Source of the DNA: Octopus bimaculoides
Lineage: Eukaryota
Direction of reading: 5' to 3'
DNA length: 64,000 nt
NCBI RefSeq assembly: GCF_001194135.2
Contig: NC_068987.1
Span: 47,817,420 to 47,881,419, forward strand
The translations under genes and the position numbers were made by a program. Below, in pieces: positions 1-53,202 of the stretch (position 1 is its first letter; every line of letters starts with the position of its first letter). The notes beneath the pieces were generated by a model that made no database searches, was not told where the DNA came from, and worked only from the letters and a program-made list of their open reading frames with translations.

Positions 1-2598
1 ATAGTTTTCTATCCTTATCGAGAAATTTGATGATAGGGAGGAAGAGCTACAGTCCTGTGACGTAGAAGGTAGCTGGGAATTGCTGCAAGACAGCTTGCTG
101 AGTGCCACAGACCAAATCTGTGGCTGGTGCAAAGTCCCTTCCAGACCCAGGGTAACATGGTGGTGGGACAATACTGTAGACAGGGCTATTAGAGTAAAGA
201 AACAGGCTTGGAATGCCTGGAAGAGTGGGGGTAGCAGGAGAATGTATCAGATAGCCAAAAGGGAAGCTAAGAGACAGGTATATATTGCCAAGGGAGTAGC
301 AGAAGAGAAGAAGTTTGCCAATGTTCAGCGATATGAGGACCAAAGAACTGAAGTATTTCGGATTGCAAGACAGTGTGTGGAAGAAAACCATGATGTCATA
401 GGAGAGAAATGCATCTGCATAGATGAGGGTGCTCTTACATTTAATGATTCTGCAAAGAAAGAGGCTTGGAGAAGCTATTATGAAAGACTGCTGAATGTGG
501 AGAATGAATGGGAGGAGGAGAGTCTGCCAAAGGTTGACCCAATTGAGGGACCAGCTATCTGAATCAACAGCACCCAAATAGATAAAGCAATTACCTGGTC
601 CATCAGGAATCACCGCTAGGATGATTAAAATATTGGGTGGTGTGGGTTATGGTCTTGTCACCCGCATCATAAACCAGGTAGTTCATGATTGAGTCATACC
701 CAATGACTGGTGTAGCAGCACCATAGTCAACTGTTACAAGAGGAAAGGTGATGCTTTAGATAGAAATAACTACAGGGGCATCAAATTATTGGATCAGGTG
801 ATGAAAGTTACAGAGAGGGTCATAGCCCAACTAATTAGGGAGAGAGTTAGCCTAGATGAGATGCATTTTGGTTTTGTGCCAGGCAGAAGCACCACTGATG
901 CTATATTTCTGGTAAGGCAACTGCAAGAGAAATACCTAGCCAAAGATAAATCTCTGTACTTCGTTTTTGTTGACTTGAAGAAAGCCTTTAACAGGGTCCC
1001 CCAATCCCTTATCTAGTGGTCAATGCGGAAACTGGGGATAGACGAGTGGTTGGTAAGGGCTGTACAGGGATGCTGTCAGTAAGGTGAAGGTTGGCAACAA
1101 GTACAATGAAGAATTCTGAGTAGAAGTAGGGGTTCAACAAGGATCAGTCCTCAGCCCCCTCTTATTCATTATAATCCTCCGGGCAATAACAGATGAATTC
1201 AAGACAGGCTGCCCCTGGGAGCTCCTCCATGCTGATGACCTTGCTCTAATAGCTGAGTCACTGCCAGAACTGGAGACAAAGTTTAGGGTGTGGAAACAAG
1301 GTCTAGAATTGAAAGGCCTCAGAGTTAACCTAGCAAAGACCAAAGTCTTAGTAAGGCTGTCAAATCACAACTCCCTGCTCGATCTGTAGAAAAGGCATGG
1401 GTAAAAACTCTATATGATGTACCCAGTGTAAGCTTTGGACACATAAAAGGTGCCTCAATATCAAAGGAAGGTTAATTGGGAAAATAGATTTTGTGTGTGG
1501 CAGATGCACCGGGGCAATAAACACTGAAGATGAACAGAAAACAGATTACATCACATTCCAGGGGGAAAAACTAGAAGTAGTTAATAGTTTCCGCTACCTA
1601 GACAACCAAGTAGTGGTTGTCTACCCTCCATGTAGTGGGGGTAGCTACTCTGAGAGTGTAGTGATTAGAGTAACAATAGCCTGGGCAAAGTTCAGGGAGC
1701 TCCTACCTCTGCTGACAACTAAGGACCTCTCGCTCAGGGTGAAAGGTAGAATGTATGATGCATGTGTGCAAACTGCCATGCTACACAGCAGTGAAACATG
1801 TACTATGAATGCTGAGGACATGCTTAGGCTTGAAAGAAATGAAGCTAGTATGATCCGCAGGATGTGCTATGTCAGTGTGCATACACGACAGAGTAAAAGT
1901 TCCCTGATAAAAAAGTTGGGCATTAGAAGCATCACATGTGGTGTGCAAGAGAGGCATCTGCGCTGGTATAGTCATGTGTTATGTATGAATGAAGACAGCT
2001 GTGTGAGGAAGTGCCATTCCCTAACTGTACAAGGAACCTGTGGAAGAGGTACCCCAGGAAGACATGGGATGAGGTGGTGAAGCATGACCTTTGAACATTG
2101 GTAATGTTCAGAGGCAATGATGGGAGACCAGGACCTTTGGAGATATGCTGTGATTAAGAAGACCTGGCAACTAAAGTGCGATCACAGTCACACATGTCCA
2201 GCCCTGTTAAGAGTACCCCTGATGCGTTGGGCAATATCATATGCTTGAGAAGACCTGTTGAGTCAAGTGAAACCAATATCGTAGCTGTGGCCAGTGCTCC
2301 CTGACTGGCTCCCGTGCCAGTAGCATATAAAAAGCACCAACCAACTGTGGCCGATGCCAGCACAGCCTCACTGGCTCTTGTGCCGGTAGCACGTAAAAAG
2401 CACCATCCGAATGTGATCGATGCCAGTACTGCCTGACTGGCTCCCATGCCAGTGGCACATAAAAAGCACCCACTACACTCTCGGAGTGGTTGGCGTTAGG
2501 AAGGGCATCCAGCTGTAGAAACATTACCAGATCAGATTGAAGCCTGGTGCAGCTGCTGGTTCTCCAGACCTCAGTCAAACCATCCAACCCATGCCAGC
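1..2598 (+). mobile_element. Degraded RTE-clade LINE (RT region plus 3' UTR); 5' part lies outside the window
   Basis: ORF pieces 80-562, 789-1016 and 1493-2080 show RT features (GFVPGRSTTDAIFLVRQLQEKY, FVDLKKAFNRVP, QGSVLSPLLF at ~1138, LHADDL at ~1225 for YADD, C-terminal LRWYSHV..CVRKC). Several stops and frameshifts. The 3' UTR matches other RTE tails in the window. Confidence 0.9.
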
Positions 2599-20156: not shown

Positions 20157-21046
20157 NNNNNNNNNNNNNNNNNNNNNNNNNNNNNNNNNNNNNNNNNNNN
20201 NNNNNNNNNNNNNNNNNNNNNNNNNNNNNNNNNNNNNNNNNNNNNNNNNNNNNNNNNNNNNNNNNNNNNNNNNNNNNNNNNNNNNNNNNNNNNNNNNNNN
20301 NNNNNNNNNNNNNNNNNNNNNNNNNNNNNNNNNNNNNNNNNNNNNNNNNNNNNNNNNNNNNNNNNNNNNNNNNNNNNNNNNNNNNNNNNNNNNNNNNNNN
20401 NNNNNNNNNNNNNNNNNNNNNNNNNNNNNNNNNNNNNNNNNNNNNNNNNNNNNNNNNNNNNNNNNNNNNNNNNNNNNNNNNNNNNNNNNNNNNNNNNNNN
20501 NNNNNNNNNNNNNNNNNNNNNNNNNNNNNNNNNNNNNNNNNNNNNNNNNNNNNNNNNNNNNNNNNNNNNNNNNNNNNNNNNNNNNNNNNNNNNNNNNNNN
20601 NNNNNNNNNNNNNNNNNNNNNNNNNNNNNNNNNNNNNNNNNNNNNNNNNNNNNNNNNNNNNNNNNNNNNNNNNNNNNNNNNNNNNNNNNNNNNNNNNNNN
20701 NNNNNNNNNNNNNNNNNNNNNNNNNNNNNNNNNNNNNNNNNNNNNNNNNNNNNNNNNNNNNNNNNNNNNNNNNNNNNNNNNNNNNNNNNNNNNNNNNNNN
20801 NNNNNNNNNNNNNNNNNNNNNNNNNNNNNNNNNNNNNNNNNNNNNNNNNNNNNNNNNNNNNNNNNNNNNNNNNNNNNNNNNNNNNNNNNNNNNNNNNNNN
20901 NNNNNNNNNNNNNNNNNNNNNNNNNNNNNNNNNNNNNNNNNNNNNNNNNNNNNNNNNNNNNNNNNNNNNNNNNNNNNNNNNNNNNNNNNNNNNNNNNNNN
21001 NNNNNNNNNNNNNNNNNNNNNNNNNNNNNNNNNNNNNNNNNNNNNA
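20157..21046. other. Assembly gap (N run)
   Basis: N characters. Confidence 1.
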
Positions 21047-22403: not shown

Positions 22404-23357
22404 TAATATTTAACAATAATTTAATAAAAAATAAAGTAAAATGTACAGTCACCCACCAATAATGAATGATATTGATTTATGATGTTGATGTGAATAATGA
22501 TGGTAATGACTGCACAGTAAAGAAGATTTAAAGCTCTTCAGATGATGCCTCTTCTTCAGATGTTTTAGGGGATGCCATATCTTCGTGCAAGGCTTTCTTG
22601 GTGCGCTTGAGGAGCATCATGATGGGAAATTACTGTTGTTGTTTCTTCATGGTGGTGAGGAGAGTTTTATGTCTGCATAGCAGCATTGATGGCATTTTTA
22701 AATTGGAGAGACCAAACCATATAGGAATCCCATGCTTCCACCTTCCCTTACAATTCCTTTACTGTCATTAAAAGGATGTTCGGTTGCCAGGCCCACCTCA
22801 TCCTCTTCCTCTGGTTCTTTCTCTTCCTCTTTGCTAACTCCAACAAATTTTTGTTTCTCAGGGTTTCAGAGTGGGCATTGATGAGGTTGTTGACCTCATC
22901 TTGTGTGATGTCGTCAAAACCTTCACCACCAAGTACCTTTGCAAGTTTCACCGCATTGGTGACAGCCTTGAGCTGAATAACTTCAGGTGAGAAGCCCTCG
23001 CAGTCTTGGACACTCTCAGGCCACACCTTCTTCCAGCATGCAATGAAGGTTTCTTTTTTCATGTCTTTAAGAGCAGCGTGGATGACTGATAGGCACATTG
23101 CAATCGTGAAGTAACGCAAGTACACCTTTAACTTGAAATTCTTGTCCAAATCCATTGAATCCACAAGGTGTTGGAGAGAGTTCTGAGTGTAAAGTGCCTT
23201 GAAGGCACGAATCACGCCTGGATCCATAGGCTGGATGAGGGAGGTGGTGTTGGCAGGGAGGAACTCGACTTGAACTCCCTCTTGTTTCAAATCCAAAGAG
23301 TGACCACCAGCATTGTCCATAACAAGCAATACCTTGAATTCCCTGCAAACATTTTGG
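22251..23357 (-). mobile_element. Tigger/pogo-family transposon, partial copy (one TIR plus transposase C-terminal part)
   Basis: TIR CAGTAGTCCCCCGGTATT at 22251. ORF 22748-23329 has LLVMDNAGGH...FLPANTTSLIQPMDPGVIRAFKALY (pogo DDE domain). Clearly homologous to 36884-40351. Confidence 0.9.
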
Positions 23358-23375
23358 AGGTGATAAACAAAGATA

Positions 23376-25259
23376 TGAGGAGGTGTTCATTACAGATTTT
23401 CCCTGACCCACTTCTGGTTATTGCATGAAACAGAACTTGTACAGGTATAATCACATGTTTCTACATGTCACATTGTGAATTGCAGCTTTCCACTAGCATT
23501 TGTTTACTTTTTATGGCTGCTGAAGTGGACTAAGGTGTTATAATGGAGGCAGTTGAATGCAGATCAGTGATCTGGTTCTTATACTCGAAAGAGACTATCG
23601 ATGAGATGAAAGAAGTTTATGGGGATCTTGTTCAAAACGGGGGCACCAGTTTTCATTTATGTTTTATGTAGTGTTTTTGGTACCGAAAGACTTTCAAACT
23701 TCATATACTTATCTATTTTGTGTTATAGAACAGAAAAAAATTTTTGTATTCGAATTTATTTCATGTAAAAAATTGTCTTATTTCGATAATTTCTACTAAT
23801 CACTGACGTCTATTCTGTTGAAAACAGTTAGCGCTGTAACGGTGTATATCGTATTAATCCCCTAACCCTAACTAGACTGTTAACCCTAAAACTAACCCTA
23901 ACTCTAGAATCCGAACTCTAAAATTGTTACACACATAGATACGCACAGCGTAATTTATTATATAAACAATATATGCGTATAAATTACGATTAAACCGGAT
24001 GAAATATGTCACAGGGAATAACATTTTTATGACCGTCCAGCAGTAACTCTATTCAGCTGAATAGACGTCAGTGATTGGTTGAAATTACAGAAATACGACA
24101 ACTTTAACATGGAATAACTTGCGATGTACGTTTTTTTGTTAAGAAGACTAAGAGTAAAAGATGTTTTATATGACACATTCTACCAGTGTCCCAAGTTTCA
24201 AAGTGTTTCGTTAAGAAAATACTGGTGCCCCCGTTTTGAACTAGATCCGTTTATGGTGATGATGCACCATTATATGAGGTCAAGTACTGACATCACCAGT
24301 TCAAATGTGGTCAGACATTGGTAGAAACTGCTTCTATTCCTGGACAACCACATTCTGCCATTGATGACAACACCATCCATAAAATAGAAGCTGCCATTTT
24401 GGAAGATCACCACATAACTATTCAGCAGCTAGCCTAAGAAGTGAAGATAAGTGGAGGGTCTGTGGAAAACATCATTCATGACCATTTGTACATGCGGAAG
24501 TTGTCTGCATGATGGATTCCCTGGATGCTCACACCTTTTCAGAAGTAGGAACAAGTCAGTTGCTACCAGGCTCTTTTGGCAATGTGCCAAGAAAATGAGG
24601 AGGACATTTTCAGCAGACTTATCACACAGGATGAAACATAAGTCCATCACTATGATCCTGAAACACAAGTCCAGTTGAAGCAATGAAAGCATGATAACTC
24701 ACCACCTCCAAAGAAGGCTTGTATCCAACCTTCAGCAGGCAAGGTAATGCTCAGTCTTTTGGGAGTAGTGATGATGGATTTTTTTGGCAAAGGACACCAC
24801 AATTAACGGGGCATATCATGCTTCTCTGCTGCAGAAATTGCAGGACACCATCAAATCAGAGAGGCATGGCATGCTGACCAAAGGAGTCCGCCTCCTCCAA
24901 GACAACGCCCCAGTTCACAATGCACATGTTGCCAAGATGAAAGCACACTCCTGCGGCTATGAAATCCTTCCTCATCTCCCTTACTCTCCAACCTCGCACC
25001 ATCTGAAATCCACCTCTTTCCAGCCATGAAGTCTTTTTTGAAGGGGAAGCACTTTTAAGATGATAATGAACATATTTTCAAGGTAAAGTCTTGGCTCCAG
25101 ACTTCTACAAATGAGGTTTTCACAGCTGTATAAAGCAATGGGAGAAATGTGTCATCATTGGTGGTGGCTATGTAGAGAAGGACTAATAATTATGCCAAGT
25201 TTCATTTATCCCAGTCCTTGGGAAGTGGGTCAGTGGAAATCTTTAATGACCACCTCTTG
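23376..25259 (+). mobile_element. Full-length decayed mariner interrupted by a MITE
   Basis: TIRs GAGGAGGTGTTCATTACAGATTTTCCCTGACCCACTTC and GAAGTGGGTCAGTGGAAATCTTTAATGACCACCTC. Transposase remnants ETIDEMKEVY|GDDAP, RLITQDET, VRLLQDNAPVHNAHV, LPHLPYSP, with many stops. Confidence 0.88.
23623..24248. mobile_element. Merlin-like MITE (GGATC...GATCC ends, 8-bp TSD) with internal CCCTAA repeats
   Basis: GTTTATGG at 23615-23622 and 24249-24256. TIR GGATCTTGTTCAAAACGGGGGCACCAG. Four CCCTAA at ~23860-23910. Both arms match the 40571-41410 element. Confidence 0.8.
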
Positions 25260-30489: not shown

Positions 30490-30794
30490 TTAATACAAAA
30501 TTTGTTCAGACTTCAGTTTTGTGCCAACACCATAAGTCCGAGATGAGGCACTGATGGCTTTGTTAGTAAGAATAAGTTCTAATTCTTGGAAATCCACAAG
30601 ACGCTTCACATCTTTGTCTTTGCGGATGATCGTATTGGGCAATTTACGTATTTTATATACAAGGCGTTTATCAATGTTCAGTTCTTGACACAACAAGTTC
30701 AGGAGGGCATCAAATGTCAATGAAGACCGATCCAACTCTATTTCTATGTAATCTTGTTCTTCAACATTGGCAACTCTTGCTCTGAGGACGATTT
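30490..30794 (-). CDS. ANKRD40: ANKRD40 last coding exon
   Basis: Acceptor TTTTCCAG|AA (phase 1), EIVLRARVANVEEQDYIEIELDR...EQILY, stop TAA. Confidence 0.93.
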
Positions 30795-33700: not shown

Positions 33701-34413
33701 TTCCCAATTATGTGGTTTCAAGTTCTGTCCCATTGTGTGGCACCTTGGGCAAGTGTCTTCTACTATAGCCCTAGGCCAACAAAGCTTTTTGAATGGATTT
33801 GGTAGACAGAAACTGAAAGAAGTCCATCATATATATATATGTGTGCATGTGTTAGTGTGTACCCTTGTCCTGATATCATGTTGGTAGTAAACATGCATCA
33901 TGGTCACATAAATGATCTGTAAAAAAATATGTCTGGCCATAGGCAAATATTGACTTGCTTGGAAACAGGTGAGGACTGATGACAGGAAGGGCATCTCATT
34001 TAACTGTAGAAAAATCTGCCTCAGTGAATTCTGTCCAACCTATGGGAGCATGGAAAAGTGGATATCAAAATGATAATGATATAAAAAAATTTAGAAACAA
34101 AAACTGATTCCAATACTATCTTTTGCTTAAAAGGTTAGAAGTTATATCTATAGCTTGCTTATTCTTCTCTAGTTTTCAATTCCAATCAATCTATATAAAA
34201 ATTAACATGATGAAGCTACTAACCATTTTCAAGGTTAAAGGCAAATAAACCTTTGGATGGTGCCATCTGCTGCTGTGGAACACCACTGAGAGCAGGTTGT
34301 GCAGGGTTTGCGTGTGGCATTGTTCGATGTGCCTGGTAATTTGAATGTATTGGTATGTTCTGTTCTTTTATATCCAAAGCAGCAGTGGCATCTGTGACTG
34401 TAACAAAAGACAA

Positions 34414-34445
<32 letters not shown>

Positions 34446-37400
34446 AATTAAGAAAAGAAAGGAAAGGAAAATAGCAACTACATTTGTTTAGAACCATGAG
34501 CTGTAACTAATTCCTTTGAGCTACATCTTAGGACTGCCATATCTTATCTTTAATACCTCATATCTGCCACTATTCTCAACATCATCCCAAACCTGCTGTC
34601 AATGATCACAACCACCTTTCTCCTTCATTCACAATAACCACCTCTCCATCTCTGTCACAATACATCTCTTTCTTGCTCTCCAACCACTCTTCAACCATGC
34701 ACATCATCTCCCTATTTCCTGATCTATCTACAGGTTTATTATACTACTGCTCTTTACCATTCCTGTACTGCTACATATCACCTCCTTCTTGAGCCACTCT
34801 TAGTTCTTTCACTTCCTCCTCCAATCTGATACTTGTCACCAATAAAAACCTCCACCCTTGTTCATCATTCACTACATTCATCTCTATCTCACTCTAACTG
34901 TCTGTCACTCTCCTATTACACTCTAATGAACTTACCCACCTATCTATGAACATCTCCATTTCTGATCTCTTATATACTCACCTTTTTGTAACTTGCAAGT
35001 CTCACTACCAGCATCTTTGTCTTCCATCCAGTTATCCCCACTCACCCTTATATAATGTGGGGTAGCTTTTTATCTCCTTTATAGCAAGATACCTGAGCCT
35101 GTTCCTCTACTGTATTTCAGCATCTCAATACCTGGCATAAAGACTTGTACTAAACTCCACCCAGTCAAGGGAACTTTGTCCTTCTCTTGCAAAGTTACAG
35201 ATGACCTCACTAGTGCCAGTGTTATGAAAAAAAAAAATGTGCAGTACACTCTGTGAAGCAGTTGGCATTAGGAAAGGCATTCAGGTATAGAAACCATGCT
35301 GAAACAGACACTGGAGCTCAATGTAGTCCTTCAACTTGTTGAATCCTGTAAACTACACAACCCATACCAGCATGGAAAACAGACATTAAATGATGATGAG
35401 GAGGAGGAGGAGAACGCACTGCACCAACAATGGTATTATGCAAATGACAACAACAATTGATCCAGCATCATTTTATGCAAGCTTTCACACACTTCTTAGG
35501 GACTGGTGAGGAATGGTTGAGCATCATCGATAATGAACTGATTCTTACTTTAATCTTCAAAAGCTTTGGAACCCAATCCAATAAAGGAGTACTGTGTGTT
35601 AGCTCAGTCTGCTAGAAATAGCAGCCAAATCACCCTTAAAAAACATACTAATACCATCTGAAATAAGGAAGGACACAGTGGATAATGTAGTCCTTGATAC
35701 ACTATGTTTGAATAAAGGATAGGATGGTCACAACTGGAATGCTCAGATATAGACCTGTTGGATTGGGGATAATTTGAGGAGGATAGGGCTTAAACAACTA
35801 CTAACTACAAAATGTCTATTTATTTCTTTCAAGAAACATCATAGTTCACTGAGCTGATGTTTATTGCCAGATCCTGTAGTGTTCAATGCATTGAAACAAA
35901 TTTCGCCTCCCAAATAGAATATCGGTATAAGGGAAGTAATTATTCCTGCAAGAGGTATTTGTCATTTAGAAGAGGAAAATAAGATACTGATATTCAGTGT
36001 CCAACATTAAAACATTATACTGTATGTTAGGTCTCATTTAATGGATTTAATGTTTGTATCCTCATTTGTTAGCATAAGGAGGACACTGAAAATCATTAGT
36101 TTGATCTCTGCAGATGTTTCAACAATATACAGGGATAGCAGGCAGCAAGCTGGAAGAATTGTTAGAATGCCGGGCAAAATAATTAGTGTCATTTCATTGT
36201 CTTTACATTCTGAGTTCAAACTCTGCTGAGGTCGACTTTACCTTTCATCCTTTCAGAGTTGATAAAATAAGTACCAGTTGAGTAATAGGGTTGATGTAAT
36301 TGACTTACCCACTCCCCTGAAGTAGCTGGCATTGTGCCAAAATTTGAAACCAATACAGAGGGACAGCAAAAAAAAAAAAAAAAAAAGGAAAAGGAAAAGG
36401 TGGAAATAGCATAAAAGAAACAAAAGTGAGCAACAGAAAAGAGTGAACAGAAAAAAAGAGGGATACAGAGAAATGAAAAACGATAGCATAGGAGACAGCA
36501 GAGAAGATAGAGGGAGATAACAAAAAAAAAGGAAGGTGAAAATATCAAGACAAAGAGAATAATGTTTCTACAAACCATTCTCAGTGTTATATGAATATAG
36601 TCCTTTGGATGGAGGCAGCTGTTGAGGGGCACTTGAAGGTGTGGACTGCGTAGGAGTTGTGTGCGGAAATGGAGGATGAGCTAAGTAATTTGGATGAATT
36701 GGTAAGTTGGGTTCCTTTATATCCAAAGCAGCAGCATCTGAGACTAGAATGAAAGGAAAAGAAGAAAACAATAAAGGGTTGAAAAGGAAGTAGGGGTAAT
36801 AAAACATATTTGGAGCATTCCTACTGTTAATTGGCTATTTAATTAAATGGCTGTTAAATTTTGGGCTGGTCTATTTTGGTATACAGTAGTCCCCAGATAT
36901 TCGCAGGGGTTATGTTCCTAGAGTACCCGCGAATAGTGAAAAATCATGAATATTGGACATGGTCCATAAAAATGCCTATAAATGTCAAAATATGACATAA
37001 TATATATATATATATGTATATATCAAAAATACATTTCTTTGCCTTCTCTTCTTGCTCACTTTCCCTCCTCTTTTCACTTCACTGTGTCCCTGTGCTCCTC
37101 CTTAATTCTTCTGTCTCTCTGCCTCTACTTCTCTCTCTTCTCACCGCACGTGACTGGTGTTCAACCAAACCTGATCTTTCTTTTTTGGTTCGTCCGTGCA
37201 ACATCTATATTCCTCCCTGTGCCTGTGAAATCTTGTATCCCTTGTAAGGCTTTATTTCCATACATGCCAGCTTGATTTAATTCATCCTTAGTTGAAAGAC
37301 GTCTGTTGTTATGTCTTGTTATTTGTATTTGTGTAACATTCTCCATTTTTTTCCGTCCTTGTTTTCATATTCATTTGCTGCTTTCTTCCAAGGAATCTAA

Positions 37401-39939
37401 TGCTCTTAGCTTAGTTTTTCCTTGGGGCTGTCCAGATTGGAGCAAATTCGAGTATAACCAGCCGATATTGCAAAGATAATCTGGAACTCGACTGAGGAAA
37501 GAAAACTCTGAATGACCCACCCTTGTTTTCTTTGTATCGTCTATCTGGATGTTTTGTTGTTCCTTTTTTGTATCCTCTAACTGTCTGGATGTCCTGGGTT
37601 CTTGTCCCATTTTGTATTTTATATATGTATATGTATATATATATATTTAATACTAATTTAATAAAAATAAAGTAAAATGTAAGGTTACTCACCAATAATA
37701 AATAATATTGATTTAAGATGATGATGATGATGATGAAAATAATGATGGTAATGACTGCACAGCAAAGAAGATTTAAAGCTCTTCAGGTGACACCTGTTCT
37801 TCAGGTGACACCTGTTCTTCAGGTGTTTTAGGGGATGTCGTATCTTCATGCAAGGCTTTCTTGGAAGCCTTGAGGAAAATTGTGATGGGAAGTTGCTGTT
37901 GTTGTTTCTTCATGGTCGTGAGGAGAGTTTTATATGTCTGCATGGCAGCATTGATGGCATTTTTAAATTAGAGGGACCGAACTATATAGGGATCCCATGC
38001 TTCCACCTTCCCTTGCAATTCTTTTACTGTCCTTAAAAGGTTGGACAGACGTTCGAATGCCAGGCCCATCTCATCCTCCTCTTCCTCTGGATCTGGCACT
38101 TCCTCCTCTTCTTCACTGGCAGACTTCATTAATTCCAACAAATCTTTGTCTGTTAGGGTTTCAGAGTGGTCATCGATGAGGTCAAAACCTTCACCAAGTA
38201 CCTTTGCCAGTTTCACCGCTTTCTTGACAGCCTCACGCTGAATAACTTCAGGTGAAAAGCCCTCGCAGTCCTGGCCTCTCTGGCCACACATTCTTCTAGC
38301 ATGCAATGAAGGTTTCTTTTTTCATGTCTTTAAGAGTAGCGTGGATGACTGACAGGCACGTTGCGATCATGAAGTTATGCCAGTACTCCTTTAACTTGAA
38401 ATTCTCATCTGAATCCAAGGTGTTGGAGAGAGTTCTGAGTGTAAAGTGCCTTGAAGGCACAGATCACGCCTTGATCCATAGGCTGGATGAGGGAGGTGGT
38501 GTTGGCAGGGAGGAACTCGACTTGAACTCCCTCGTGATTCAGATCTAAAGAGTGACCACCAGCATTGTCCATAACAAGCAACACTTTGAATTCCATGCAT
38601 ACGTTTTGGAGGTATTCCTTGACTTGAGGGATGAAGCATTGGTGGAACCAGTTCAAAGTTAGACTTTTAGTAATCCAGACCTTGGGGTTGTGCATCCAGT
38701 GGACAGGCAGCAGGTTTTTATTCTTATTTTTGAAGGCCCTAAGGTTTGCAGACTTGTAGATAAATCTTGGTTTCATTATGAAGCCAGCAGCATTGCCACA
38801 CGTAATTAGCATTACTCTGTCCTTCTGTGCTTTAAATCTTGGGGCTCTGGCTTCGTCCTTCATGATGTACGTTCTGGAAGGCATCTTCTTCCAGAACAAG
38901 CCAGTCTTGTTCATATTGAAAGTCAGTTCTGGCTTGTATCCCTTGTCCTCGATGATCTAACTGAAGGTCTCAAGGTACTTCTCAGTGGCTACTTTGGTGG
39001 CTGATGCTGTCTCTCCATGCAGGGAAACACACTTTATTTTAAACCATTTCTGGAAATGATCAAACTATCCCTTGCTGGCTTGAAAATCTTCAGGCTCCGG
39101 TGCTGTCAATTGTCTTGGTTGCAGTTCTTTGGTGCCTTCTGCTCTGTCTTCTCTGTTGAACTGCTGGTATAATTTCAGTGCTTTTTCGTGAATGATGTTA
39201 CTGCTCAAGGGGATGTTTTCCTTCTTGCAGTCACTGATCCACAATGCCAAGGTAGATTCCATCCTGAGGAAGTGCTTATTTCTCACTATCGTTATCTTTT
39301 TGGCACTTTCACAGAAACTTACTGCTATGGTAGTCCTGATTGCCATCTCGTTCTTCTTTATGTAGCATATGGTGATTTCGTTGACAACATAATAGCGACA
39401 GCATAACTTTACCTTCCCAGAACATATCCAACAGTTGTACCTTCTCATGGAGCATCATAACCTTTTTTTGGCATTTAGGTTCACTGCCTTAGAAAGTGTA
39501 GGGCGTTTGGGTGGCATCTTAGGGTTTTAATAAGACACTGCGAAAAACACAGCACTCAACAAAATACTCGAGATAGCCACTGGATGCAGTCCCCCCACCA
39601 CCACCACCAAAAAAAAAACCTACAAAATCTTCCTTTCATCTAATATGTGCATAATCACCAATGGGAGATTAAGCAGAGATTAAAAACAATCATGGTTTTG
39701 AAAAATTTAGTTTGTACTACTATTAGATAAAGTAACCTATATTATAACAATAATAAGAGAGAGAGAGAGAGAGAGAGAGCAGCAAGTAACCTAATTTCAA
39801 TTAGGCTATATTCGCTCATGACCTTAAAAATTATCCTGTTGAAATAAACAATGTGTATGATCAAATGTAGCAATTAACGTTTAGTCTCGTGTTGTATCTT
39901 TGATCTGTCATCAGTAGCCCAAGTAATACTGGTGCGATA

Positions 39940-46335: not shown

Positions 46336-47082
46336 ATGAGTTTTACTAGAATAACAAACAGTTACTTACCTCCCAGTAACTGATGTATGGTGGAGTCTGA
46401 TGTTAATTCAGCAGGGATGTTACCATCAAAATTTTTTATATTTTTATCTGCACCATGTGTCAAAAGGAAAGCAACAACAGATGTATGGTTTCTAATTGTA
46501 GCCCAGTGCAAAGCAGTACTGAAATAAAATAAATAAATAAATAAATAAATAAAAAATAATGACATCTATTTGTTTTGCAAGAATCTTGACAAGAAATCAT
46601 GTGCTGAAACAGATACAGATAGTTATAATTATAGATAAGGATGGTCATATTTTGCCAAATAAAGAATAAGAGTAGACATGTGAGATAGAGTTGCTGAAGA
46701 GGTCACAGGATGTGTAATGAAGGAGTTTTGACAAAGAATCTAAAATAATAATAATAATAAAGCTGAAGTGAAGATCAAATATATAGTGTGTGCATGTTTA
46801 ATTGACAAAATATGACCATCTCCAAGTAAACAATAACGATATAATTATTACGATTACTAGCTTTGGCACAAGCAGCAAATCTTCAGGAACTGTAAAATCC
46901 ATAATACAAACTTGACTGGTATTTATTTTATTGACCTCAGGAAAATGAAAAGTAGTCAACCATAGTATCATTTAAAATACAAAACATGAAGACAAAATAC
47001 TGGTTTTAGTCTCAACTATTCCAGCCACTTTACACAACTAAATATTGCAATGTTGTTGTCAAGAGTTCAACTGTTTCTGTCT

Positions 47083-47393: not shown

Positions 47394-50300
47394 CCTTTCT
47401 ATTATAGGCACAACGCCTGAAATTTTGGGGGCGGGGACTAGTTGATCACATTGATCCCAGAATTTCACTGGTACTTAATTTATCAACTCTGAAAGGATGA
47501 AAGGCGAAGTCAAGTTCAGCAGAATTTGAACTCAAAATGTGGTAATGGGCAGAATACTGCTAAGCATTTCATTCAGCATGCTAACAACTCTGCCAGCTCA
47601 TCACCTTAANNNNNNNNNNNNNNNNNNNNNNNNNNNNNNNNNNNNNNNNNNNNNNNNNNNNNNNNNNNNNNNNNNNNNNNNNNNNNNNNNNNNNNNNNNN
47701 NNNNNNNNNNNNNNNNNNNNNNNNNNNNNNNNNNNNNNNNNNNNNNNNNNNNNNNNNNNNNNNNNNNNNNNNNNNNNNNNNNNNNNNNNNNNNNNNNNNN
47801 NNNNNNNNNNNNNNNNNNNNNNNNNNNNNNNNNNNNNNNNNNNNNNNNNNNNNNNNNNNNNNNNNNNNNNNNNNNNNNNNNNNNNNNNNNNNNNNNNNNN
47901 NNNNNNNNNNNNNNNNNNNNNNNNNNNNNNNNNNNNNNNNNNNNNNNNNNNNNNNNNNNNNNNNNNNNNNNNNNNNNNNNNNNNNNNNNNNNNNNNNNNN
48001 NNNNNNNNNNNNNNNNNNNNNNNNNNNNNNNNNNNNNNNNNNNNNNNNNNNNNNNNNNNNNNNNNNNNNNNNNNNNNNNNNNNNNNNNNNNNNNNNNNNN
48101 NNNNNNNNNNNNNNNNNNNNNNNNNNNNNNNNNNNNNNNNNNNNNNNNNNNNNNNNNNNNNNNNNNNNNNNNNNNNNNNNNNNNNNNNNNNNNNNNNNNN
48201 NNNNNNNNNNNNNNNNNNNNNNNNNNNNNNNNNNNNNNNNNNNNNNNNNNNNNNNNNNNNNNNNNNNNNNNNNNNNNNNNNNNNNNNNNNNNNNNNNNNN
48301 NNNNNNNNNNNNNNNNNNNNNNNNNNNNNNNNNNNNNNNNNNNNNNNNNNNNNNNNNNNNNNNNNNNNNNNNNNNNNNNNNNNNNNNNNNNNNNNNNNNN
48401 NNNNNNNNNNNNNNAACACTTCTCTCTCTACTCTCACCTTCCTTTTCAAGTGGAACTTGAAAAAGTTGATGGGGCCTTGGCCAAAGGGGAAAGTGTCTGA
48501 TTTTAGCCCTTTCAAACAGGTCCACCATACCACCTCTTTCGCTACAGCCACAAGACAAATGAAAATTGCCTTGCCCTCCCGGTTAAAGGAGGTCAGCGAC
48601 CATCTTCACTGTGGATTCAGCTGATAGCCGGATCCGTCCTACACGCAACAGTAGCTATTTGACATAAACCCACAGGTCAGCAATACTCGGGCACTGGACG
48701 AGTGTGTGCAGAAAGGTTTTGTCGCTCTGAGTGCACCTCGGGCAGGCCTGGCACTTTTGTGCTGGTAGAGTTTATCTCAAACAGGCAGCGCCCCACGGGA
48801 GCACTGCCAGACGAGGGACTTTTGGAAATTATCCATGGGCCCCGGCCCAAAAGTTCTGCCAAACAGACTACTCAGTTGGTCATCGTTGATGCCTAGAGTT
48901 TCCCCAAGAATGTCGTCACACTTCTCCTGCACTAACCCTCTATAGAACACTAGAGTGGAACTACTACCGATCGCATTGCCACCCGGTAGAGGGCGGTGAG
49001 AACTTGATGGCACTCAAGGTGCCAAGCACCCTTTCTCGGTCTACATCTGATCCAAGATTGCAGCTTGGTCAACGAGACGAGCTGTGGAAAGGAGAGTCTG
49101 ATGAACGGCGACCACACCTGCTCACCGTCCAGGAAACGCTTGAGATGCTGTAGCCTGAGTGCATCAGCAACCACGGCATGCCCAAGCCTCCATTCAGTGG
49201 CTGTTGACAGCAGACGGAGTGCCTGACCAGTGGTACCTGACCCTTCCACAGAAAGTTGAAGAGCAAGCGCACCAGCTTGGTTACCCAGCAGTCAGGACAA
49301 GGGACGACGGTCAAGCGGTAATAGATGACGGATGTGATGTATGCATTCACCACCTCCGCTCAACCTTTCAGGGACAGCTTCCTCTCAGCCCATTTCTGAG
49401 TGAGATTGGCCACCCTGTTTGTCACTTCATCCCAGTTGTTCTCCACCTGGAGGTTCGGACTGAGCCAGATCCCGAGCAATTTAACAGGACCGTCAGTTCA
49501 GCATTCCATGACGCTGTTGGACGGCATGGACTTGCCCCTCCAGGTGCCCAGTTGCAAGCCCACCGACTTTTCCACGTTAATTTTCGTGCCTTGTCTTATC
49601 GTCCGTCTGCAGAGGGTGTGGTGGACAAAGAAGGGAACAGTTTACTGTTCTCTTCAAATGACATTTTGGCAAAATTTACAAGTTTTAAAATGAAAAATTT
49701 GCCCCTAAAAGGGAAAAATTCTGCCTAACCGATTAGCTCAGCAAGAGCCTAGTCGGCTTGGCTACACAAATATACAAAAATATCAATAGGTTTAACAATA
49801 TTTCCAATGAAAATTGGCTCAAAACTTACAGCTTCTGAAAACACTTCAGCCCGCTTTCAAAACAATAATAATAATAATAATAATGGTTTTAAATTTTGGC
49901 ACAAAGATAGCAGTTTTAGGGGAGGGGTAAGTCGATTACATTGGCCCCAGTTCTCAACTGGTATTTATTTTATAGACACTGAAGGGATGACAGGCAAAGT
50001 TAACGTTGGCAGAATTTGAACTTAGAGTGTAGAGATGAATGAAATGCTGTTAAGCATTTTATCCAGTGTGCTAACAATTCTGCCAGCTCGCCACCTTAAA
50101 TAATGGTTTTAAATTTTGGAACAGGGTCAGCAAGTTTGGGGCAGGGGGTAAGTTGATTACATCAACCCCAGTGCTCAACTGGTACTTACTTTATCGACCC
50201 AGAAAGGATAAAAAGCAAAGTCAACCCTGGCGGCATTTGAACTCAGAATGTATAAAGAGACAGAAGAATCACTACTATGCATTTTGTCCGGTGCAGTAAT

Positions 50301-52306
50301 GATTCTGCCATCTTGCCACTTCAAATAATAATAATGGTTTCAAGTTTTGGCACAAGGCCAATAATTTTGGAAGAGGTGGCGGGGGGGGGGGAATCAATTA
50401 CACAAAACTCAGTATTCAACTGGTATTTGTTGCATTAACCCCAAAAGGATGAAAAGCAAAGTTATCCTTAATGGAATTTGAAGTGTAAAAAAACCAAAAG
50501 AAATTATGCTAACAATTTTTCTAGCTAATTATGTTTTTGTTGTTATTTTTTATTTTTTTTCACAAGGCCAGCAATTTTGAGGGGAAGGAGTGAGTTGATA
50601 CCATCAATCCTAGTATAAGGCAAGTACTTTATTGACTCTGCAGAGTTGAAAGGTGAAGCTGATCTTCAGGNNNNNNNNNNNNNNNNNNNNNNNNNNNNNN
50701 NNNNNNNNNNNNNNNNNNNNNNNNNNNNNNNNNNNNNNNGGGGGGGGGGGGAATCAATTACACAAAACTCAGTATTCAACTGGTATTTGTTGCATTAACC
50801 CCAAAAGGATGAAAAGCAAAGTTAACCTCAACAGAATTCAATATCAAAATGCAAAGAACCTAAACAAATGTTGCAAGACCTTCTGTCTGAAGCACTCTAA
50901 TGAGTCTGCCATCCACCATCCTGACAATAATTTAGGCACAAAGCCAGCAATTTCTGATAAGAGTTAGTTGATTGCAATGACCCCCCCCCCCAGTACTTGA
51001 CTGGCACTTTATTTTATCAATCGTGGAGGGATGAAAGACAAAGTAGACTGCGGCAGGATTTGAACTCAGAAGAGTCAGAACAAATACTGCAAAACATTTC
51101 TTTACAATACTCATGAGTCAGCAAATTCACTACCATAACAACAACCCCTTCTATTATAGGCACAAAGTCTGAAATTTTCGGGGAGTGGGCTAGTCGATTA
51201 CACTGACCCCAGTGCGCAACAGGTACTTATTTCATTGACCCCAAAAGGATGAAAGGTAAACTCGAATTTGAATTCAGAACATAAAGACACGAAATGCAGC
51301 TGAGCATTTTGCCCAGCATGCTAACAATTCAGCCAGCTCGCTGCCCCTAATAATGATAATAATGATTTCAAATTTTGGCACAAGGCCAGTAATTTCGGAG
51401 AACGAGGTCTAGTCGATTATATTGACCCCAATATTCAACTAGTATTTATTTTATCAACCCCAGCATAATTTGAACTCAGAACATAAGGTCGGAAGAAATG
51501 CCACTACACATTTTTTCTGATGTGGTAACGATTCTACCAGCCCGCCACCTTTAATAATCCTTTCAGCTACAGGCACAAGGCCTGGAAAATTAGGGGAGGG
51601 GGCTAATCGATTACGACCCTATAAAGGTTGATAAAATAAGTACCAAAGTCGACTTGGAAATTTGAACAAGACATAAACCCGGAAGAAATGCTGCATAACA
51701 TTTTGTCCAGCGTGCCAACGATTGTCACCTCGCTGCCTTTAATAATCGTTTCTACTATAGGCACAAAACCTGGAAAACTGGAGGAGGGGACCAGTCGATG
51801 ACATAAATGTCACAGTTTAAATGATGTATGGGAGGAAGATAAAACAGAATGTTCACGCCTGACACACCCAAAAGGTCTATTGAACCAGAGCTGACTTGGG
51901 GCTACACATTTTTTTTACACCTATTAGACTTTTTTTTTTTTTTTTGGTGACCGGGAGTTAAACTATATATTAAACACAAAAACTTTAAGAACACAGGAAG
52001 ACAATCAAGTTTATACATTTGCAATGATCGCCGGTGCCGTAAACAGTACTCAAAACCAAAGTTCGTCGTATCATCGTTTAACACACATACACACTACGAA
52101 GACAGACACACTCTAACATGTACACGTGTTTTGTTGTGTAATATTTACCACCCATGAAGACTGCTCTGTGAATTAACATCTACACCACTTTCCACGATTT
52201 CGGTCAGTTTTTCCATGTCCCCACAGGCAGCTGCTTCTCGAAAACTTCCTTCCAATACATGAGGAGCAACGTCTGTATTCTGTTGTGTCTGGTCGTCGTT
52301 TTCCAT
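30490..52306 (-). CDS. ANKRD40: Ankyrin repeat domain-containing protein 40 homologue; join(52306-52149, 46518-46370, 36743-36576, 34397-34224, 30794-30490)
   Basis: N-terminal ankyrin repeats (REAAACGDMEKLTEIVESGVDVNSQ..G.TALHWA), central PNYLAHPPFP motif, and C-terminal IEIELDRSSLTF..KIRKLPNTIIRKDKDVKRLVDFQELELIL, which I recognise as the ANKRD40 C-terminal domain. All introns are GT-AG with consistent phases (2,1,1,1). Predicted 259 aa with exon 3a only, 261 aa with 3b only, 317 aa with both. Confidence 0.92.
31092..32367 (+). mobile_element. Full-length decayed mariner in the last ANKRD40 intron
   Basis: TIRs TCAGGTCATTAACAATGAAATGTC and GACACTTCATTCTTAATGACCTGA. Remnants YEYEFHHGTNASQTAQNINEVF, WIPHELN, IVTCDEKW, KKLMVSVWWS, PILLQDNG, SPDLAPTDYHVF; many stops. 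Confidence 0.9.
33665..34082 (+). mobile_element. Near full-length CORE-type SINE with RTE-derived 3' tail
   Basis: tRNA-like head, CORE-like GGCACCTTGGGCAAGTGTCTTC, internal (TA/TG)n, then CAGGAAGGGCATC..CTGTAGAAA..TCCAACC..GCATGGAAAAGTGGA..ATGATAATGAT. Related copies at ~26310-26765, ~32380-32550 (minus) and 63020-63240. Confidence 0.78.
34224..34397 (-). CDS. ANKRD40: ANKRD40 exon 3b (tandem duplicate of exon 3a)
   Basis: 174 nt, phase 1-1. Acceptor TTACAG|TC after a (CTTT)n tract, donor G|GTTAGT. Encodes TDATAALDIKEQNIPIHSNYQAH...PSKGLFAFNLEN. Confidence 0.75.
36135..36350 (+). mobile_element. Single SINE unit (array family), antisense to ANKRD40, between exons 3a and 3b
   Basis: Complete head, core and tail ending GTGCCAAAATTTGAAACC. 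Confidence 0.8.
36576..36743 (-). CDS. ANKRD40: ANKRD40 exon 3a
   Basis: 168 nt, phase 1-1. Acceptor ATTCTAG|TC, donor G|GTTTGT. Encodes SDAAALDIKEPNLPIHPNYLAHPPFPH...PSKGLYSYNTEN. Confidence 0.85.
36884..40351 (-). mobile_element. Near full-length Tigger/pogo transposon with pseudogenised transposase (~39517 to ~37772), in ANKRD40 intron 2
   Basis: TA|CAGTAGTCCCC TIR at 36884 and a degenerate partner ending ~40351. CENP-B-type N-terminus (MPPKRP.., MESTLALWISDCKKENIPLSSNIIHEKALKLY, FQASKG), MNKTGLFWKKMP, VMDNAGGH, IQPMDQGVI. Frameshifts and stops. Confidence 0.9.
37025..37620. other. Unclassified ~0.6-kb insertion inside the (TA)n tract of the Tigger copy
   Basis: Absent from the homologous position of the 22251 copy; flanked by (TA)n on both sides. 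Confidence 0.6.
40571..41410. mobile_element. 840-bp fold-back Merlin-like MITE with 8-bp TSD and head-to-head telomere-like repeats
   Basis: CTATTTTC at 40563-40570 and 41411-41418. Ends GGATCATTTTGGTTTGACGGGCAACA and TGTTGCCCGTCGAACCAAAAAGATCC. Long inverted arms; centre has TTAGGG variants (~40915-40980) facing CCCTAA variants (~41005-41085). Confidence 0.85.
43530..44280 (-). mobile_element. 5'-truncated RTE LINE (ORF C-terminus plus full 3' UTR ending in (GAT)n)
   Basis: MRWYGHVARMDEDSCVKKCHTLAVEGICGRGRPRKTWDEVVRHDLQTLGL..KTRQAK*, then the UTR ending GGACGTTAAACGATGATGATG. Confidence 0.9.
44402..44622 (-). mobile_element. piggyBac-type MITE, copy 3
   Basis: TTAA at 44398-44401 and 44623-44626; ends GCCTTTAGCATTT and AATGCTAAAGGG. 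Inverted relative to copy 1. Confidence 0.8.
45230..46335 (+). repeat. Cluster of three short RTE/SINE 3' tails ending in (GAT)n, next to ANKRD40 exon 2
   Basis: Three GAAGGGCA..TAGAAAC..CCATCCAAC.CATGCCAGC..GGACATTAAATGATGAT motifs (~45230-45410, ~45850-46030, ~46140-46335), with a long (GAT)n at ~46280-46335. Confidence 0.75.
46370..46518 (-). CDS. ANKRD40: ANKRD40 coding exon 2 (ankyrin repeat)
   Basis: Acceptor TTTCAG|T, TALHWATIRNHTSVVAFLLTHGADKNIKNFDGNIPAELT, donor G|GTAAGT; 149 nt, phase 2-1. Confidence 0.93.
47610..48414. other. Assembly gap (N run)
   Basis: N characters. Confidence 1.
48415..49590 (-). mobile_element. Tx1/L1-like LINE fragment (RT C-terminal part and downstream region)
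   Basis: INVEKSVGLQLGTW..VKLLGIWL..WDEVTNRV..LSLKG*AEVVNAYITSVIYYRLTV..FLWKG..NGGLGMP, later SLVWQCSRGALPV, as in L1/Tx1-clade ORF2. Stops and frameshifts; GC-richer than its flanks. Confidence 0.75.
50671..50739. other. Assembly gap (N run)
   Basis: N characters. Confidence 1.
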
Positions 52307-52990: not shown

Positions 52991-53202
52991 NNNNNNNNNN
53001 NNNNNNNNNNNNNNNNNNNNNNNNNNNNNNNNNNNNNNNNNNNNNNNNNNNNNNNNNNNNNNNNNNNNNNNNNNNNNNNNNNNNNNNNNNNNNNNNNNNN
53101 NNNNNNNNNNNNNNNNNNNNNNNNNNNNNNNNNNNNNNNNNNNNNNNNNNNNNNNNNNNNNNNNNNNNNNNNNNNNNNNNNNNNNNNNNNNNNNNNNNNN
53201 NN
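52991..53202. other. Assembly gap (N run)
   Basis: N characters. Confidence 1.

What the first reader, a model, noticed from the sequence alone, without database searches (positions are those of the whole stretch)
34224..36743. ANKRD40 has a tandemly duplicated internal exon; both copies appear to be under selection (candidate mutually exclusive or additive cassette pair)
Seen: two exons 2.2 kb apart encode clearly homologous peptides (34/58 identical residues by manual alignment). Both are phase 1-1 and multiples of 3 (168 and 174 nt), both have AG/GT sites, and neither has a stop. The only indels are whole codons, many differences are synonymous (AAG/AAA, ATT/ATA, CCG/CCA, GGA/GGT, GAG/GAA), and the intron flanks no longer align. 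Exon 3a keeps PNYLAHPPFP, which I recall as the conserved ANKRD40 linker motif (human PNYLANPAFP); exon 3b replaces it with SNYQAHRTMP. Inference: an old duplication allowing four in-frame isoforms (203, 259, 261, 317 aa), with 3b a variant that swaps or doubles a short linear motif. I know of no description of this in ANKRD40, but could not search.
Basis: partly seen in the sequence, partly recalled or inferred. Interest (0 to 1): 0.8.

Follow-up and report, generated by a model that had tools for sequence, protein, structure and literature searches.

The report
Duplicated linker exon in octopus ANKRD40
Two neighbouring exons of the octopus ANKRD40 gene are old copies of each other and both are kept intact by selection, but current gene models in four octopod species splice both into the same mRNA, so this is an ordinary internal repeat rather than a demonstrated either/or switch.

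Summary
On the minus strand, exons 3a (36576-36743, 168 nt) and 3b (34224-34397, 174 nt) are phase 1-1, AG/GT-flanked and stop-free. They share 34 of 56 aligned residues (shuffle z = 17).

The window is Octopus bimaculoides. E1'+E2+3a+3b+E4 gives 317 aa, identical to RefSeq XP_014772292.1 (ANKRD40 isoform X2), so both exons are already annotated, and jointly included. All seven further models that carry these exons (O. bimaculoides X1, O. sinensis, O. vulgaris, Argonauta hians) also contain 3a followed by 3b. No 3a-only or 3b-only protein exists in the ~15-billion-sequence collection. Only a 2015 model (203 aa) skips both.

Cuttlefish and squid have a single, 3a-like exon, and Argonauta has both copies. 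The duplication is therefore octopod-specific and predates the Octopus/Argonauta split. Both copies are under purifying selection (dN/dS about 0.26 and 0.27, P < 0.001). Only the exons still align between Octopus and Argonauta.

The best reading is a tandem exon duplication fixed as an additive internal repeat of the linker between the ankyrin and ubiquitin-like domains. No known mechanism that would enforce mutual exclusivity is present. Transcript junctions could not be tested here. This is a real, modestly interesting, new example of a common phenomenon.

The parts
52149..52306 (-). ANKRD40 alternative first coding exon E1' (ATG at 52306), encoding the start of the ankyrin domain; used by isoform X2
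   Evidence: Searches give the sequence, the ATG and the donor TG|gtaaat. The assembled protein is identical to XP_014772292.1. The orthologous exon is conserved in O. sinensis, O. vulgaris and Argonauta.
46370..46518 (-). Exon 2 (149 nt), the ankyrin repeat; ends in phase 1
   Evidence: Pfam Ank hit at residues 51-82. 100% amino-acid identity to O. sinensis. dN/dS 0.06 against Argonauta.
36576..36743 (-). Exon 3a (168 nt, phase 1-1): the ancestral-like copy of the linker exon, carrying the conserved motif LPIHPNYLAHPPFPH
   Evidence: Its orthologues are intact in four octopods. dN/dS against Argonauta is 0.26 (Fisher P = 7e-4).
34398..36575 (-). Intron between 3a and 3b (2178 nt), U2-type GT-AG. 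Apart from about 35 nt upstream of 3b and 8 nt downstream of 3a, it has no similarity to the other introns flanking these exons
   Evidence: It does not align between Octopus and Argonauta.
34224..34397 (-). Exon 3b (174 nt, phase 1-1): the derived, faster-evolving copy with the degenerate motif IPIHSNYQAHRTMPH. Its 3' end abuts the UBL-encoding exon
   Evidence: It is intact in five octopod genomes. dN/dS against Argonauta is 0.27 (Fisher P = 3e-4).
30490..30794 (-). Coding part of the last exon (E4), ending in the stop TAA at 30490-30492; encodes the ANKRD40 ubiquitin-like domain
   Evidence: PF27687 (ANKRD40_UBL) is recorded on the orthologues. dN/dS is 0.04. AF2 pLDDT is above 90.

Best explanation
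This is a tandem duplication of the single linker exon of ANKRD40. It arose in the octopod lineage after the split from cuttlefish and squid and before the Octopus/Argonauta split. It has been fixed as an additive internal repeat: both exons are spliced, in order, into the main mRNAs.

The protein therefore has an N-terminal ankyrin domain, two tandem copies of the linker module, and a C-terminal ubiquitin-like (UBL) domain.

The copies have diverged in a complementary way:
- 3a sits next to the ankyrin domain and keeps the family-wide motif LPIxPNYLAxPxFP. AlphaFold places this motif with intermediate confidence directly after the ankyrin domain, but no contacts could be inspected.
- 3b sits next to the UBL domain and keeps the conserved ...N-x-E/D-N end that leads into the first UBL strand. 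Its motif copy has degenerated, and the rest is a predicted disordered, faster-evolving spacer.

The net effect is a linker about 57 residues longer, with a second, weakened copy of the motif.

Shown:
- the homology between the exons;
- the age bracket of the duplication;
- purifying selection on both copies;
- joint inclusion in all modern gene models.

Inferred:
- that inclusion is constitutive at the RNA level in all tissues;
- that the motif docks on the ankyrin domain;
- the functional consequence of the longer linker.
For: Annotation:
- Exact identity of E1'+E2+3a+3b+E4 to RefSeq XP_014772292.1.
- All models of O. bimaculoides X1/X2, O. sinensis X1/X2, O. vulgaris (3 models) and Argonauta hians contain 3a followed by 3b.
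- The 259-aa and 261-aa single-copy proteins are not in the ~15-billion-protein collection.

Conservation of both exons:
- Both exons have canonical sites and an open frame in O. sinensis, O. vulgaris and Argonauta.
- 3b is also intact in a fifth octopod genomic contig (L007), with an in-frame +3 nt.
- The splice boundaries in Argonauta differ from Octopus (3a donor shifted, 3b acceptor 6 nt downstream) yet keep phase 1-1 and lengths divisible by 3 (141 and 159 nt), so the models are not a simple projection.

Selection:
- dN/dS against Argonauta is 0.26 for 3a (P = 7e-4) and 0.27 for 3b (P = 3e-4).
- Between the paralogues it is 0.21 with dS of about 1.2 (P = 1e-5).
- Between Octopus and Argonauta only the exons align across about 25 kb.
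- 3b is 90% identical against 74-84% for its flanking introns in L007.

Dating:
- The tree has a 3a clade and a 3b clade as sisters, with the decapod single exon as outgroup.
- Sepia pharaonis genome and transcripts have one exon 3.

Structure (AF2):
- ANK domain pLDDT above 90.
- The start of 3a falls from 91 to 66, with a short helix at NYLA.
- Residues 151-228 are mostly below 50.
- The last residues of 3b rise into the UBL.

Complementary decay:
- Argonauta 3a has lost the C-terminal KGLYSYNTE segment, while 3b keeps ...NVDN.
- The motif half of 3a is far better conserved than that of 3b (alignment).
Against: - No RNA reads or transcript contigs from any octopod could be examined. The evidence for joint inclusion consists of gene models, and I could not see their transcript support.
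- One older O. bimaculoides model (UniProt A0A0L8HHF2, 203 aa) skips both exons, and a guinea-pig RefSeq isoform X2 skips the homologous linker exon. Some alternative skipping is therefore plausible.
- Both exons have a non-consensus U at donor position +3, a feature compatible with regulated exons.
- Between the closely related Octopus species, dN/dS for 3b is 0.7-0.85, on only 7-8 substitutions (not significant, P = 0.55).
- Docking of the motif on the ankyrin domain rests on intermediate pLDDT only. No contact map was available.
Confidence: 0.72

Rival explanations
1. Regulated cassette exons. 3a and/or 3b (or both together) are skipped in some tissues or stages, giving linker-length or motif-number isoforms alongside the two-copy form.
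For: - Both exons are symmetric (phase 1-1, divisible by 3), so every combination stays in frame.
- A 203-aa O. bimaculoides model lacks both exons, and Cavia porcellus isoform X2 lacks the homologous exon.
- Both donors have +3 U (GTTTGT/GTTAGT), which is weaker than the GTAAGT of exon 2.
Against: - No 3a-only or 3b-only protein exists in the collection.
- RefSeq calls only two isoforms per Octopus species, and these differ in the first exon, not in 3a/3b.
- The three O. vulgaris models all keep both exons.
- The loss of the 3a C-terminal segment in Argonauta is easier to understand if 3a is normally followed by 3b.
Confidence: 0.22
2. Strictly mutually exclusive exons. Each mRNA carries either 3a or 3b, swapping the canonical motif for the variant.
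For: - The exons are tandem homologues of similar length and the same phase, which is the classic origin of mutually exclusive exons (PMC9013439).
- The motif differs between the copies.
Against: - Eight gene models in four species contain both exons, and none contains one alone.
- Double inclusion keeps the frame.
- The intervening intron is 1.5-2.4 kb, so there is no steric block.
- Both introns are U2-type GT-AG.
- No conserved intronic island that could serve as a docking or selector site survives between Octopus and Argonauta.
Confidence: 0.03
3. 3b is a decaying pseudo-exon, or an annotation artefact kept in models only because it is open and in frame.
For: - 3b evolves faster than 3a and has lost the core P-x-F-P of the motif.
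- dN/dS among the close Octopus species is near 0.8, on very few changes.
Against: - The frame is open, with canonical splice sites, in five octopod genomes. All indels are in-frame.
- dN/dS is 0.27 against Argonauta (P = 3e-4).
- 3b is one of only five blocks that align between Octopus and Argonauta across the gene.
- It is more conserved than its flanking introns in L007.
Confidence: 0.03

Closest known systems
Tandem exon duplications retained as internal protein repeats. Tandemly duplicated exons occur in roughly 10% of animal genes, according to a 2002 survey (reference 22 of PMC9013439) as summarised by Ivanov & Pervouchine 2022 (PMC9013439)
   Same: - Adjacent homologous exons on the same strand.
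- The same phase and similar length.
- Introns diverged beyond recognition.
- Both copies coding and spliced in series.
   Different: Nothing essential. The particular gene (ANKRD40) and lineage (octopods) do not appear in the literature I could search.
Mutually exclusive exon pairs derived from tandem duplication (Dscam, ATE1 7a/7b, SCN exon 5a/5b, tropomyosin; PMC9013439, PMC7797038, PMC12772994)
   Same: - Origin by tandem exon duplication.
- Homologous peptides that differ in a functionally conserved segment.
   Different: - Here both exons sit in the same predicted mRNA.
- There is no frame, steric or spliceosome incompatibility.
- No conserved intronic pairing elements were detected.
ANKRD40 family (N-terminal ankyrin repeats, linker with a conserved LPIxPNYLAxPPFPY motif, C-terminal ANKRD40_UBL domain PF27687). 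The protein is poorly characterised
   Same: - The octopus gene is the orthologue: same domain order, same exon phases, and motif conserved in 3a.
- Non-octopod molluscs, Lingula, echinoderms and vertebrates have one motif copy.
   Different: Octopods have two linker modules and two alternative, homologous first exons. Cuttlefish and squid have one of each.
Linker-exon skipping isoform of ANKRD40 (Cavia porcellus isoform X2, 203 aa)
   Same: The ankyrin domain is joined directly to the UBL at the same phase-1 junction as in the 203-aa O. bimaculoides model A0A0L8HHF2.
   Different: In octopus the skip would have to remove two exons at once. Only an older automated model shows it.

Membership tests
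ANKRD40 orthologue | N-terminal ankyrin repeats | tested here: met
   Pfam Ank, Ank_2, Ank_3 and Ank_4 hits at residues 25-82, above their cut-offs.
ANKRD40 orthologue | C-terminal ANKRD40_UBL domain (PF27687) | tested here: met
   PF27687 is precomputed on the cluster that contains the identical protein and on all orthologues. My local Pfam copy did not report it. AF2 gives a confident beta-grasp-like strand/helix pattern at 236-320.
ANKRD40 orthologue | Conserved linker motif LPIxPNYLAxPxFP[YFH] | tested here: met
   Present in 3a (LPIHPNYLAHPPFPH). Degenerate in 3b (IPIHSNYQAHRTMPH).
ANKRD40 orthologue | Sequence identity to a named ANKRD40 record | tested here: met
   The 317-aa product is identical to XP_014772292.1, ANKRD40 isoform X2 [Octopus bimaculoides].
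Tandem exon duplication | Adjacent exons of one gene with homology beyond chance | tested here: met
   34 of 56 aa and 121 of 168 nt identical, z = 17 against shuffles. The exons are consecutive and 2178 nt apart.
Tandem exon duplication | Same phase and comparable length | tested here: met
   Both are phase 1-1, at 168 and 174 nt.
Tandem exon duplication | Single-copy state in an outgroup | tested here: met
   Sepia pharaonis genome and transcripts, and a second decapodiform-like transcript-derived protein (species not recorded), have one exon 3. The tree places the duplication inside octopods.
Mutually exclusive exon pair | Transcripts contain exactly one of the two exons | tested here: not met
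   This was tested on gene models only. All eight that carry the exons contain both, and single-copy products are absent from the collection. RNA reads could not be tested.
Mutually exclusive exon pair | Double inclusion or double skipping breaks the frame (NMD enforcement) | tested here: not met
   Both exons are divisible by 3, and all four combinations are in frame.
Mutually exclusive exon pair | Steric hindrance (very short intervening intron) or U2/U12 incompatibility | tested here: not met
   The intron is 2178 nt (1528-2437 nt in other species). The donors GTTTGT/GTTAGT and AG acceptors with long pyrimidine tracts are U2-type.
Mutually exclusive exon pair | Conserved competing RNA structures (docking and selector sites) | tested here: inconclusive
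   No collinear conserved intronic block between Octopus and Argonauta at blastn sensitivity. No dedicated search for complementary pairs was done.
Skipped cassette exon | Annotated or observed transcript lacking the exon | tested here: inconclusive
   Only A0A0L8HHF2 (203 aa, an older automated model) lacks both exons. An analogous Cavia isoform exists. No read-level data.

The most novel reading that the evidence does not exclude
Octopod ANKRD40 has gained two lineage-specific exon duplications: first exon E1/E1' and linker exon 3a/3b. If 3a and 3b are additionally regulated as independent cassettes in particular tissues such as the nervous system, the gene could produce up to eight in-frame isoforms. 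These would vary the ankyrin cap, the number and variant of the ankyrin-proximal motif, and the ANK-UBL spacing. In that case 3b would act as a competing or attenuated motif copy.
Probability: 0.12. Interest if true: 0.45.

Novelty: new member of a known kind. Interest (0 to 1): 0.25.

Why it matters
It is a clean, datable example of how a short-motif-bearing disordered linker grows by exon duplication. The two copies then decay in a complementary way: the copy next to the ankyrin domain keeps the motif, and the copy next to the UBL keeps the domain-proximal end.

It also shows that the family-wide PNYLAxPxFP motif is the most constrained part of the linker, which gives a handle on a protein of essentially unknown function.

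For cephalopod genomics, it corrects an older O. bimaculoides model (203 aa) that lacks both exons. It also adds an octopod-specific character: two exon duplications in one gene, absent in cuttlefish and squid.

It does not open a new mechanism. Tandem exon duplication is common, and both exons are already in RefSeq.

Tried and rejected
- A second protein-database search with only the linker region was meant to recover octopod transcript fragments that would reveal junction usage. It returned only a genomic ORF fragment (P0137/L007) and the 203-aa model, and missed even the identical RefSeq proteins. Its silence is therefore not informative.
- No Logan or ENA transcript contig from any octopod is present in the ANKRD40 cluster, so read-level or contig-level splice evidence could not be obtained. 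Cuttlefish transcripts were found (L005, L006), but they only show the single-copy state.
- The look-up of O. sinensis isoform X2 (P0122) failed because only the longest product per gene is indexed.
- A paralogue-flank comparison in Argonauta was confounded by overlapping windows and an intronic tandem repeat, and was not used.
- dN/dS between the close Octopus species is uninformative, with 6-8 substitutions per linker exon.
- The PDB sequence search found only generic ankyrin-repeat structures and no ANKRD40 structure.
- I looked for a published Octopus/Argonauta divergence date in the argonaut genome paper and found none in the text. I therefore give no number; dS of about 0.65-0.84 in the linker exons 3a/3b and E4 (0.42 in E2), together with unalignable introns, is the depth measure.
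- I considered a third decayed copy of exon 3 in the introns. tblastn at E <= 10 found only 3a and 3b.
- I considered a single segmental duplication explaining both E1/E1' and 3a/3b. I rejected it because exon 2 lies between them and is single-copy.
Full report
**What is in the sequence**

The gene lies on the minus strand. Reverse-complementing 34200-34420 and 36560-36770 gives two open segments, each flanked by AG and GT.
- Exon 3a is 36576-36743 (168 nt), bounded by cattctag| and |gtttgt.
- Exon 3b is 34224-34397 (174 nt), bounded by tgttacag| and |gttagt.

Both start with two bases that complete a codon begun by a G of the preceding exon, and both end with one base (G). They are therefore phase 1-1 and divisible by three.

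The remaining coding exons in the window are:
- E1' at 52149-52306, with the ATG at 52306;
- E2 at 46370-46518;
- E4 at 30490-30794, with the stop at 30490-30492.

**Is the similarity real?**

The evidence that it is real:
- The two peptides share 34 of 56 aligned residues, with two single-codon indels.
- The exons share 121 of 168 nucleotides.
- The alignment score is 17 standard deviations above 5000 shuffles.
- tblastn of either copy against the window finds the other at E of about 1e-14, and finds no third copy.
- DNA similarity extends only about 33 nt upstream (the pyrimidine tract) and 8 nt downstream of the exons.

**Identity of the locus and state of annotation**

A search of the protein collection with the 317-aa product returned ANKRD40 from across Metazoa.

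An exact-sequence look-up showed that the 317-aa product is identical to RefSeq XP_014772292.1, [quoted passage not shown]. The window is therefore O. bimaculoides, and both exons are already annotated.

The same 90% cluster holds:
- O. bimaculoides X1 (333 aa);
- O. sinensis X1 and X2 (336 and 317 aa);
- three O. vulgaris models (311, 336, 342 aa).

Argonauta hians has a 318-aa model. In the alignment of these proteins, every one contains 3a followed by 3b. The annotated isoforms differ in the first exon or, for one O. vulgaris model, at the extreme C-terminus. They never differ in 3a/3b.

The 3a-only (259 aa) and 3b-only (261 aa) products are not in the ~15-billion-sequence collection. The only model without these exons is UniProt A0A0L8HHF2 (203 aa), which skips both.

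**Age of the duplication**

I fetched the genomic loci of A. hians (L001), O. sinensis (L002), O. vulgaris (L003) and the cuttlefish Acanthosepion (Sepia) pharaonis (L004), plus two cuttlefish transcript contigs.

- All three octopod loci have the order E1, E1', E2, 3a, 3b, E4.
- The cuttlefish has one first exon and one exon 3.
- Transcript-derived proteins of cuttlefish and of a second, decapodiform-like species (not recorded) also have a single, 3a-like module.

A neighbour-joining tree of the exon-3 peptides groups all 3a copies together and all 3b copies together as sister clades. The decapod exon falls outside them, and the 3b branches are longer.

The duplication therefore happened after the octopod/decapod split and before the Octopus/Argonauta split. 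At that depth, synonymous divergence is 0.42 in E2 and about 0.65-0.84 in 3a, 3b and E4, and the introns no longer align.

**Selection**

In Argonauta both copies are open, in phase 1-1 and divisible by three (141 and 159 nt), even though the boundaries have moved.
- The 3a donor lies further upstream, removing KGLYSYNTE.
- The 3b acceptor is the AG 6 nt downstream of the one used in Octopus.

A fifth octopod genome fragment (L007, species not given) has an intact 3b with an in-frame 3-nt insertion. Its upstream AG is mutated, which leaves the same downstream AG.

Nei-Gojobori estimates against Argonauta:

| Comparison | dN/dS | Fisher P |
|---|---|---|
| 3a, O. bimaculoides vs A. hians | 0.26 | 7e-4 |
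| 3b, O. bimaculoides vs A. hians | 0.27 | 3e-4 |
| E2, O. bimaculoides vs A. hians | 0.06 | not tested |
| E4, O. bimaculoides vs A. hians | 0.04 | not tested |
| 3a vs 3b within O. bimaculoides (dS about 1.2) | 0.21 | 1e-5 |

Further evidence of constraint:
- Across about 25 kb, blastn between O. bimaculoides and Argonauta aligns only E1', E2, 3a, 3b and E4.
- Against L007, 3b is 90% identical while its flanking introns are 74-84% identical.

Both copies are constrained coding sequence. 3b is not a pseudo-exon. Among the three close Octopus species there are too few changes to say anything.

**Mutually exclusive, cassette or additive?**

The known ways of enforcing mutual exclusivity are frame incompatibility, steric hindrance from a very short intron, U2/U12 incompatibility and competing RNA structures (background in PMC9013439, and my own knowledge). 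Against each:
- Both exons are divisible by three.
- The intervening intron is 2178 nt here and 1528-2437 nt in the other species.
- Both introns are ordinary GT-AG with long pyrimidine tracts.
- No intronic block is conserved between Octopus and Argonauta that could act as a docking or selector element. I did not run a dedicated complementarity search, so this last point is inconclusive.

Together with eight gene models that all contain both exons, mutual exclusivity is very unlikely.

Regulated skipping cannot be excluded:
- All combinations stay in frame.
- Both donors have an unusual U at +3.
- A 203-aa octopus model and a guinea-pig RefSeq isoform X2 both join the ankyrin domain directly to the UBL.

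I could not obtain any octopod transcript contig or read, so this remains the main open point.

**What the duplicated module is in the protein**

ANKRD40 consists of an N-terminal ankyrin domain, a linker, and a C-terminal domain that Pfam calls ANKRD40_UBL (PF27687).

The linker carries a motif conserved from cnidarians to mammals, with consensus LPIxPNYLAxPPFPY.
- 3a keeps it: LPIHPNYLAHPPFPH.
- 3b keeps only [LI]P[IV]..NY.......PH.

An AlphaFold2 model of the O. sinensis two-copy protein, built from a 67-sequence alignment, gives:
- pLDDT above 90 for the ankyrin domain;
- a decline from 91 to 66 across the first 30 residues of 3a, with a short helix at NYLA;
- pLDDT mostly below 50 for residues 151-228, which cover the rest of 3a and nearly all of 3b;
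- a rise over the last residues of 3b into the confident UBL.

This fits complementary retention. The half of 3a next to the ankyrin domain and the end of 3b next to the UBL do the ancestral jobs, and the two inner halves are a relaxed, disordered spacer.

The Argonauta deletion of the 3a C-terminal segment agrees with this, and so does the much better conservation of the 3a motif half than the 3b motif half. It is also what one expects if 3a is normally followed by 3b.

The docking of the motif on the ankyrin domain is an inference from pLDDT only. No ANKRD40 structure exists in the PDB.

**Comparison with what is known, and verdict**

Tandem exon duplication is common. About 10% of animal genes have tandemly duplicated exons according to a 2002 survey cited in PMC9013439. 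Only a minority of such duplicates become mutually exclusive pairs.

The present case is a new, well-dated example of the additive outcome, in a poorly studied gene. I found no paper that mentions it: 79 papers mention ANKRD40, and none of the 25 listed deals with cephalopods or exon duplication. A search for "exon duplication" plus "octopus" gave nothing relevant.

The exons themselves are already in RefSeq. The finding is real, the 'under selection' inference is right, 'mutually exclusive' is not supported, and 'additive' is supported at the level of gene models. Interest is modest.

Noticed in passing
window 52149-52306 (-); L002 2001-2213 and 17151-17308; L001 2001-2201 and 6645-6794: A second octopod-specific exon duplication in the same gene. 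The first coding exon exists in two homologous versions (about 50-57% aa identity over the ankyrin-cap part), each with its own ATG and donor.
- E1 is used by isoform X1. It lies about 15 kb upstream of E1' in O. sinensis, hence beyond the end of this window.
- E1' is used by isoform X2 and is the one in the window.

Both are present in Argonauta (E1' dN/dS about 0.1 against Octopus). The cuttlefish has only the E1-like exon. These alternative first exons, not 3a/3b, account for the annotated isoforms.
   Followed up: partly
window 34392-34397 and 36738-36743 (-): Both 3a (tctag|TCTCAG|AT) and 3b (ttacag|TCACAG|AT) have a second in-frame AG 6 nt inside the exon. Argonauta and the unknown octopod L007 can only use the downstream AG for 3b. 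A 6-nt alternative acceptor that removes two residues is therefore possible in Octopus.
   Followed up: partly
window 34398-34470 (-): Immediately upstream of the 3b acceptor, O. bimaculoides has a (TTTC)n microsatellite that extends the pyrimidine tract (88% pyrimidine in the last 60 nt). O. sinensis and O. vulgaris have a shorter, T-rich version. UCUU-rich tracts can bind PTB-type splicing repressors, but this was not tested.
   Followed up: no
window 37971-39454 (-): Inside the E2-3a intron there are pogo/Tigger-like transposase fragments: DDE_1 (E = 6e-29) and the HTH_Tnp_Tc5 DNA-binding domain, broken across frames. This intron is 9626 nt in O. bimaculoides but about 2800 nt in O. sinensis and O. 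vulgaris, which suggests a lineage-specific insertion. A related DDE_1 fragment lies at 22751-23386 (-).
   Followed up: partly
window 693-1013 (+) and 59700-62500 (+): Other repeat-derived ORFs are present: a reverse-transcriptase fragment (RVT_1, E = 1e-11) near the start of the window, and Pif1-type helicase fragments (Pif1_2B domain, E = 8e-15), probably Helitron-like, near the end, upstream of ANKRD40 E1'.
   Followed up: partly
window 11978-12623, 20157-21045, 47610-48414, 50671-50739, 52991-53202: There are five assembly gaps (runs of N). Two lie in the E1'-E2 intron. One lies about 700 nt upstream of E1', where its promoter would be expected.
   Followed up: no
L001 about 11150-11870 (Argonauta intron 3a-3b): The Argonauta intron between 3a and 3b contains a tandem repeat array with a period of roughly 52-55 nt and 88-96% identity between units. 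It showed up as laddered blastn hits.
   Followed up: no
P0126 (O. vulgaris CAI9726276.1), C-terminus: One O. vulgaris model replaces the last five residues ...EQILY with SIAAFRFWIVL. This implies an alternative 3' splice or read-through at the end of the UBL exon. It was not examined at the DNA level.
   Followed up: no
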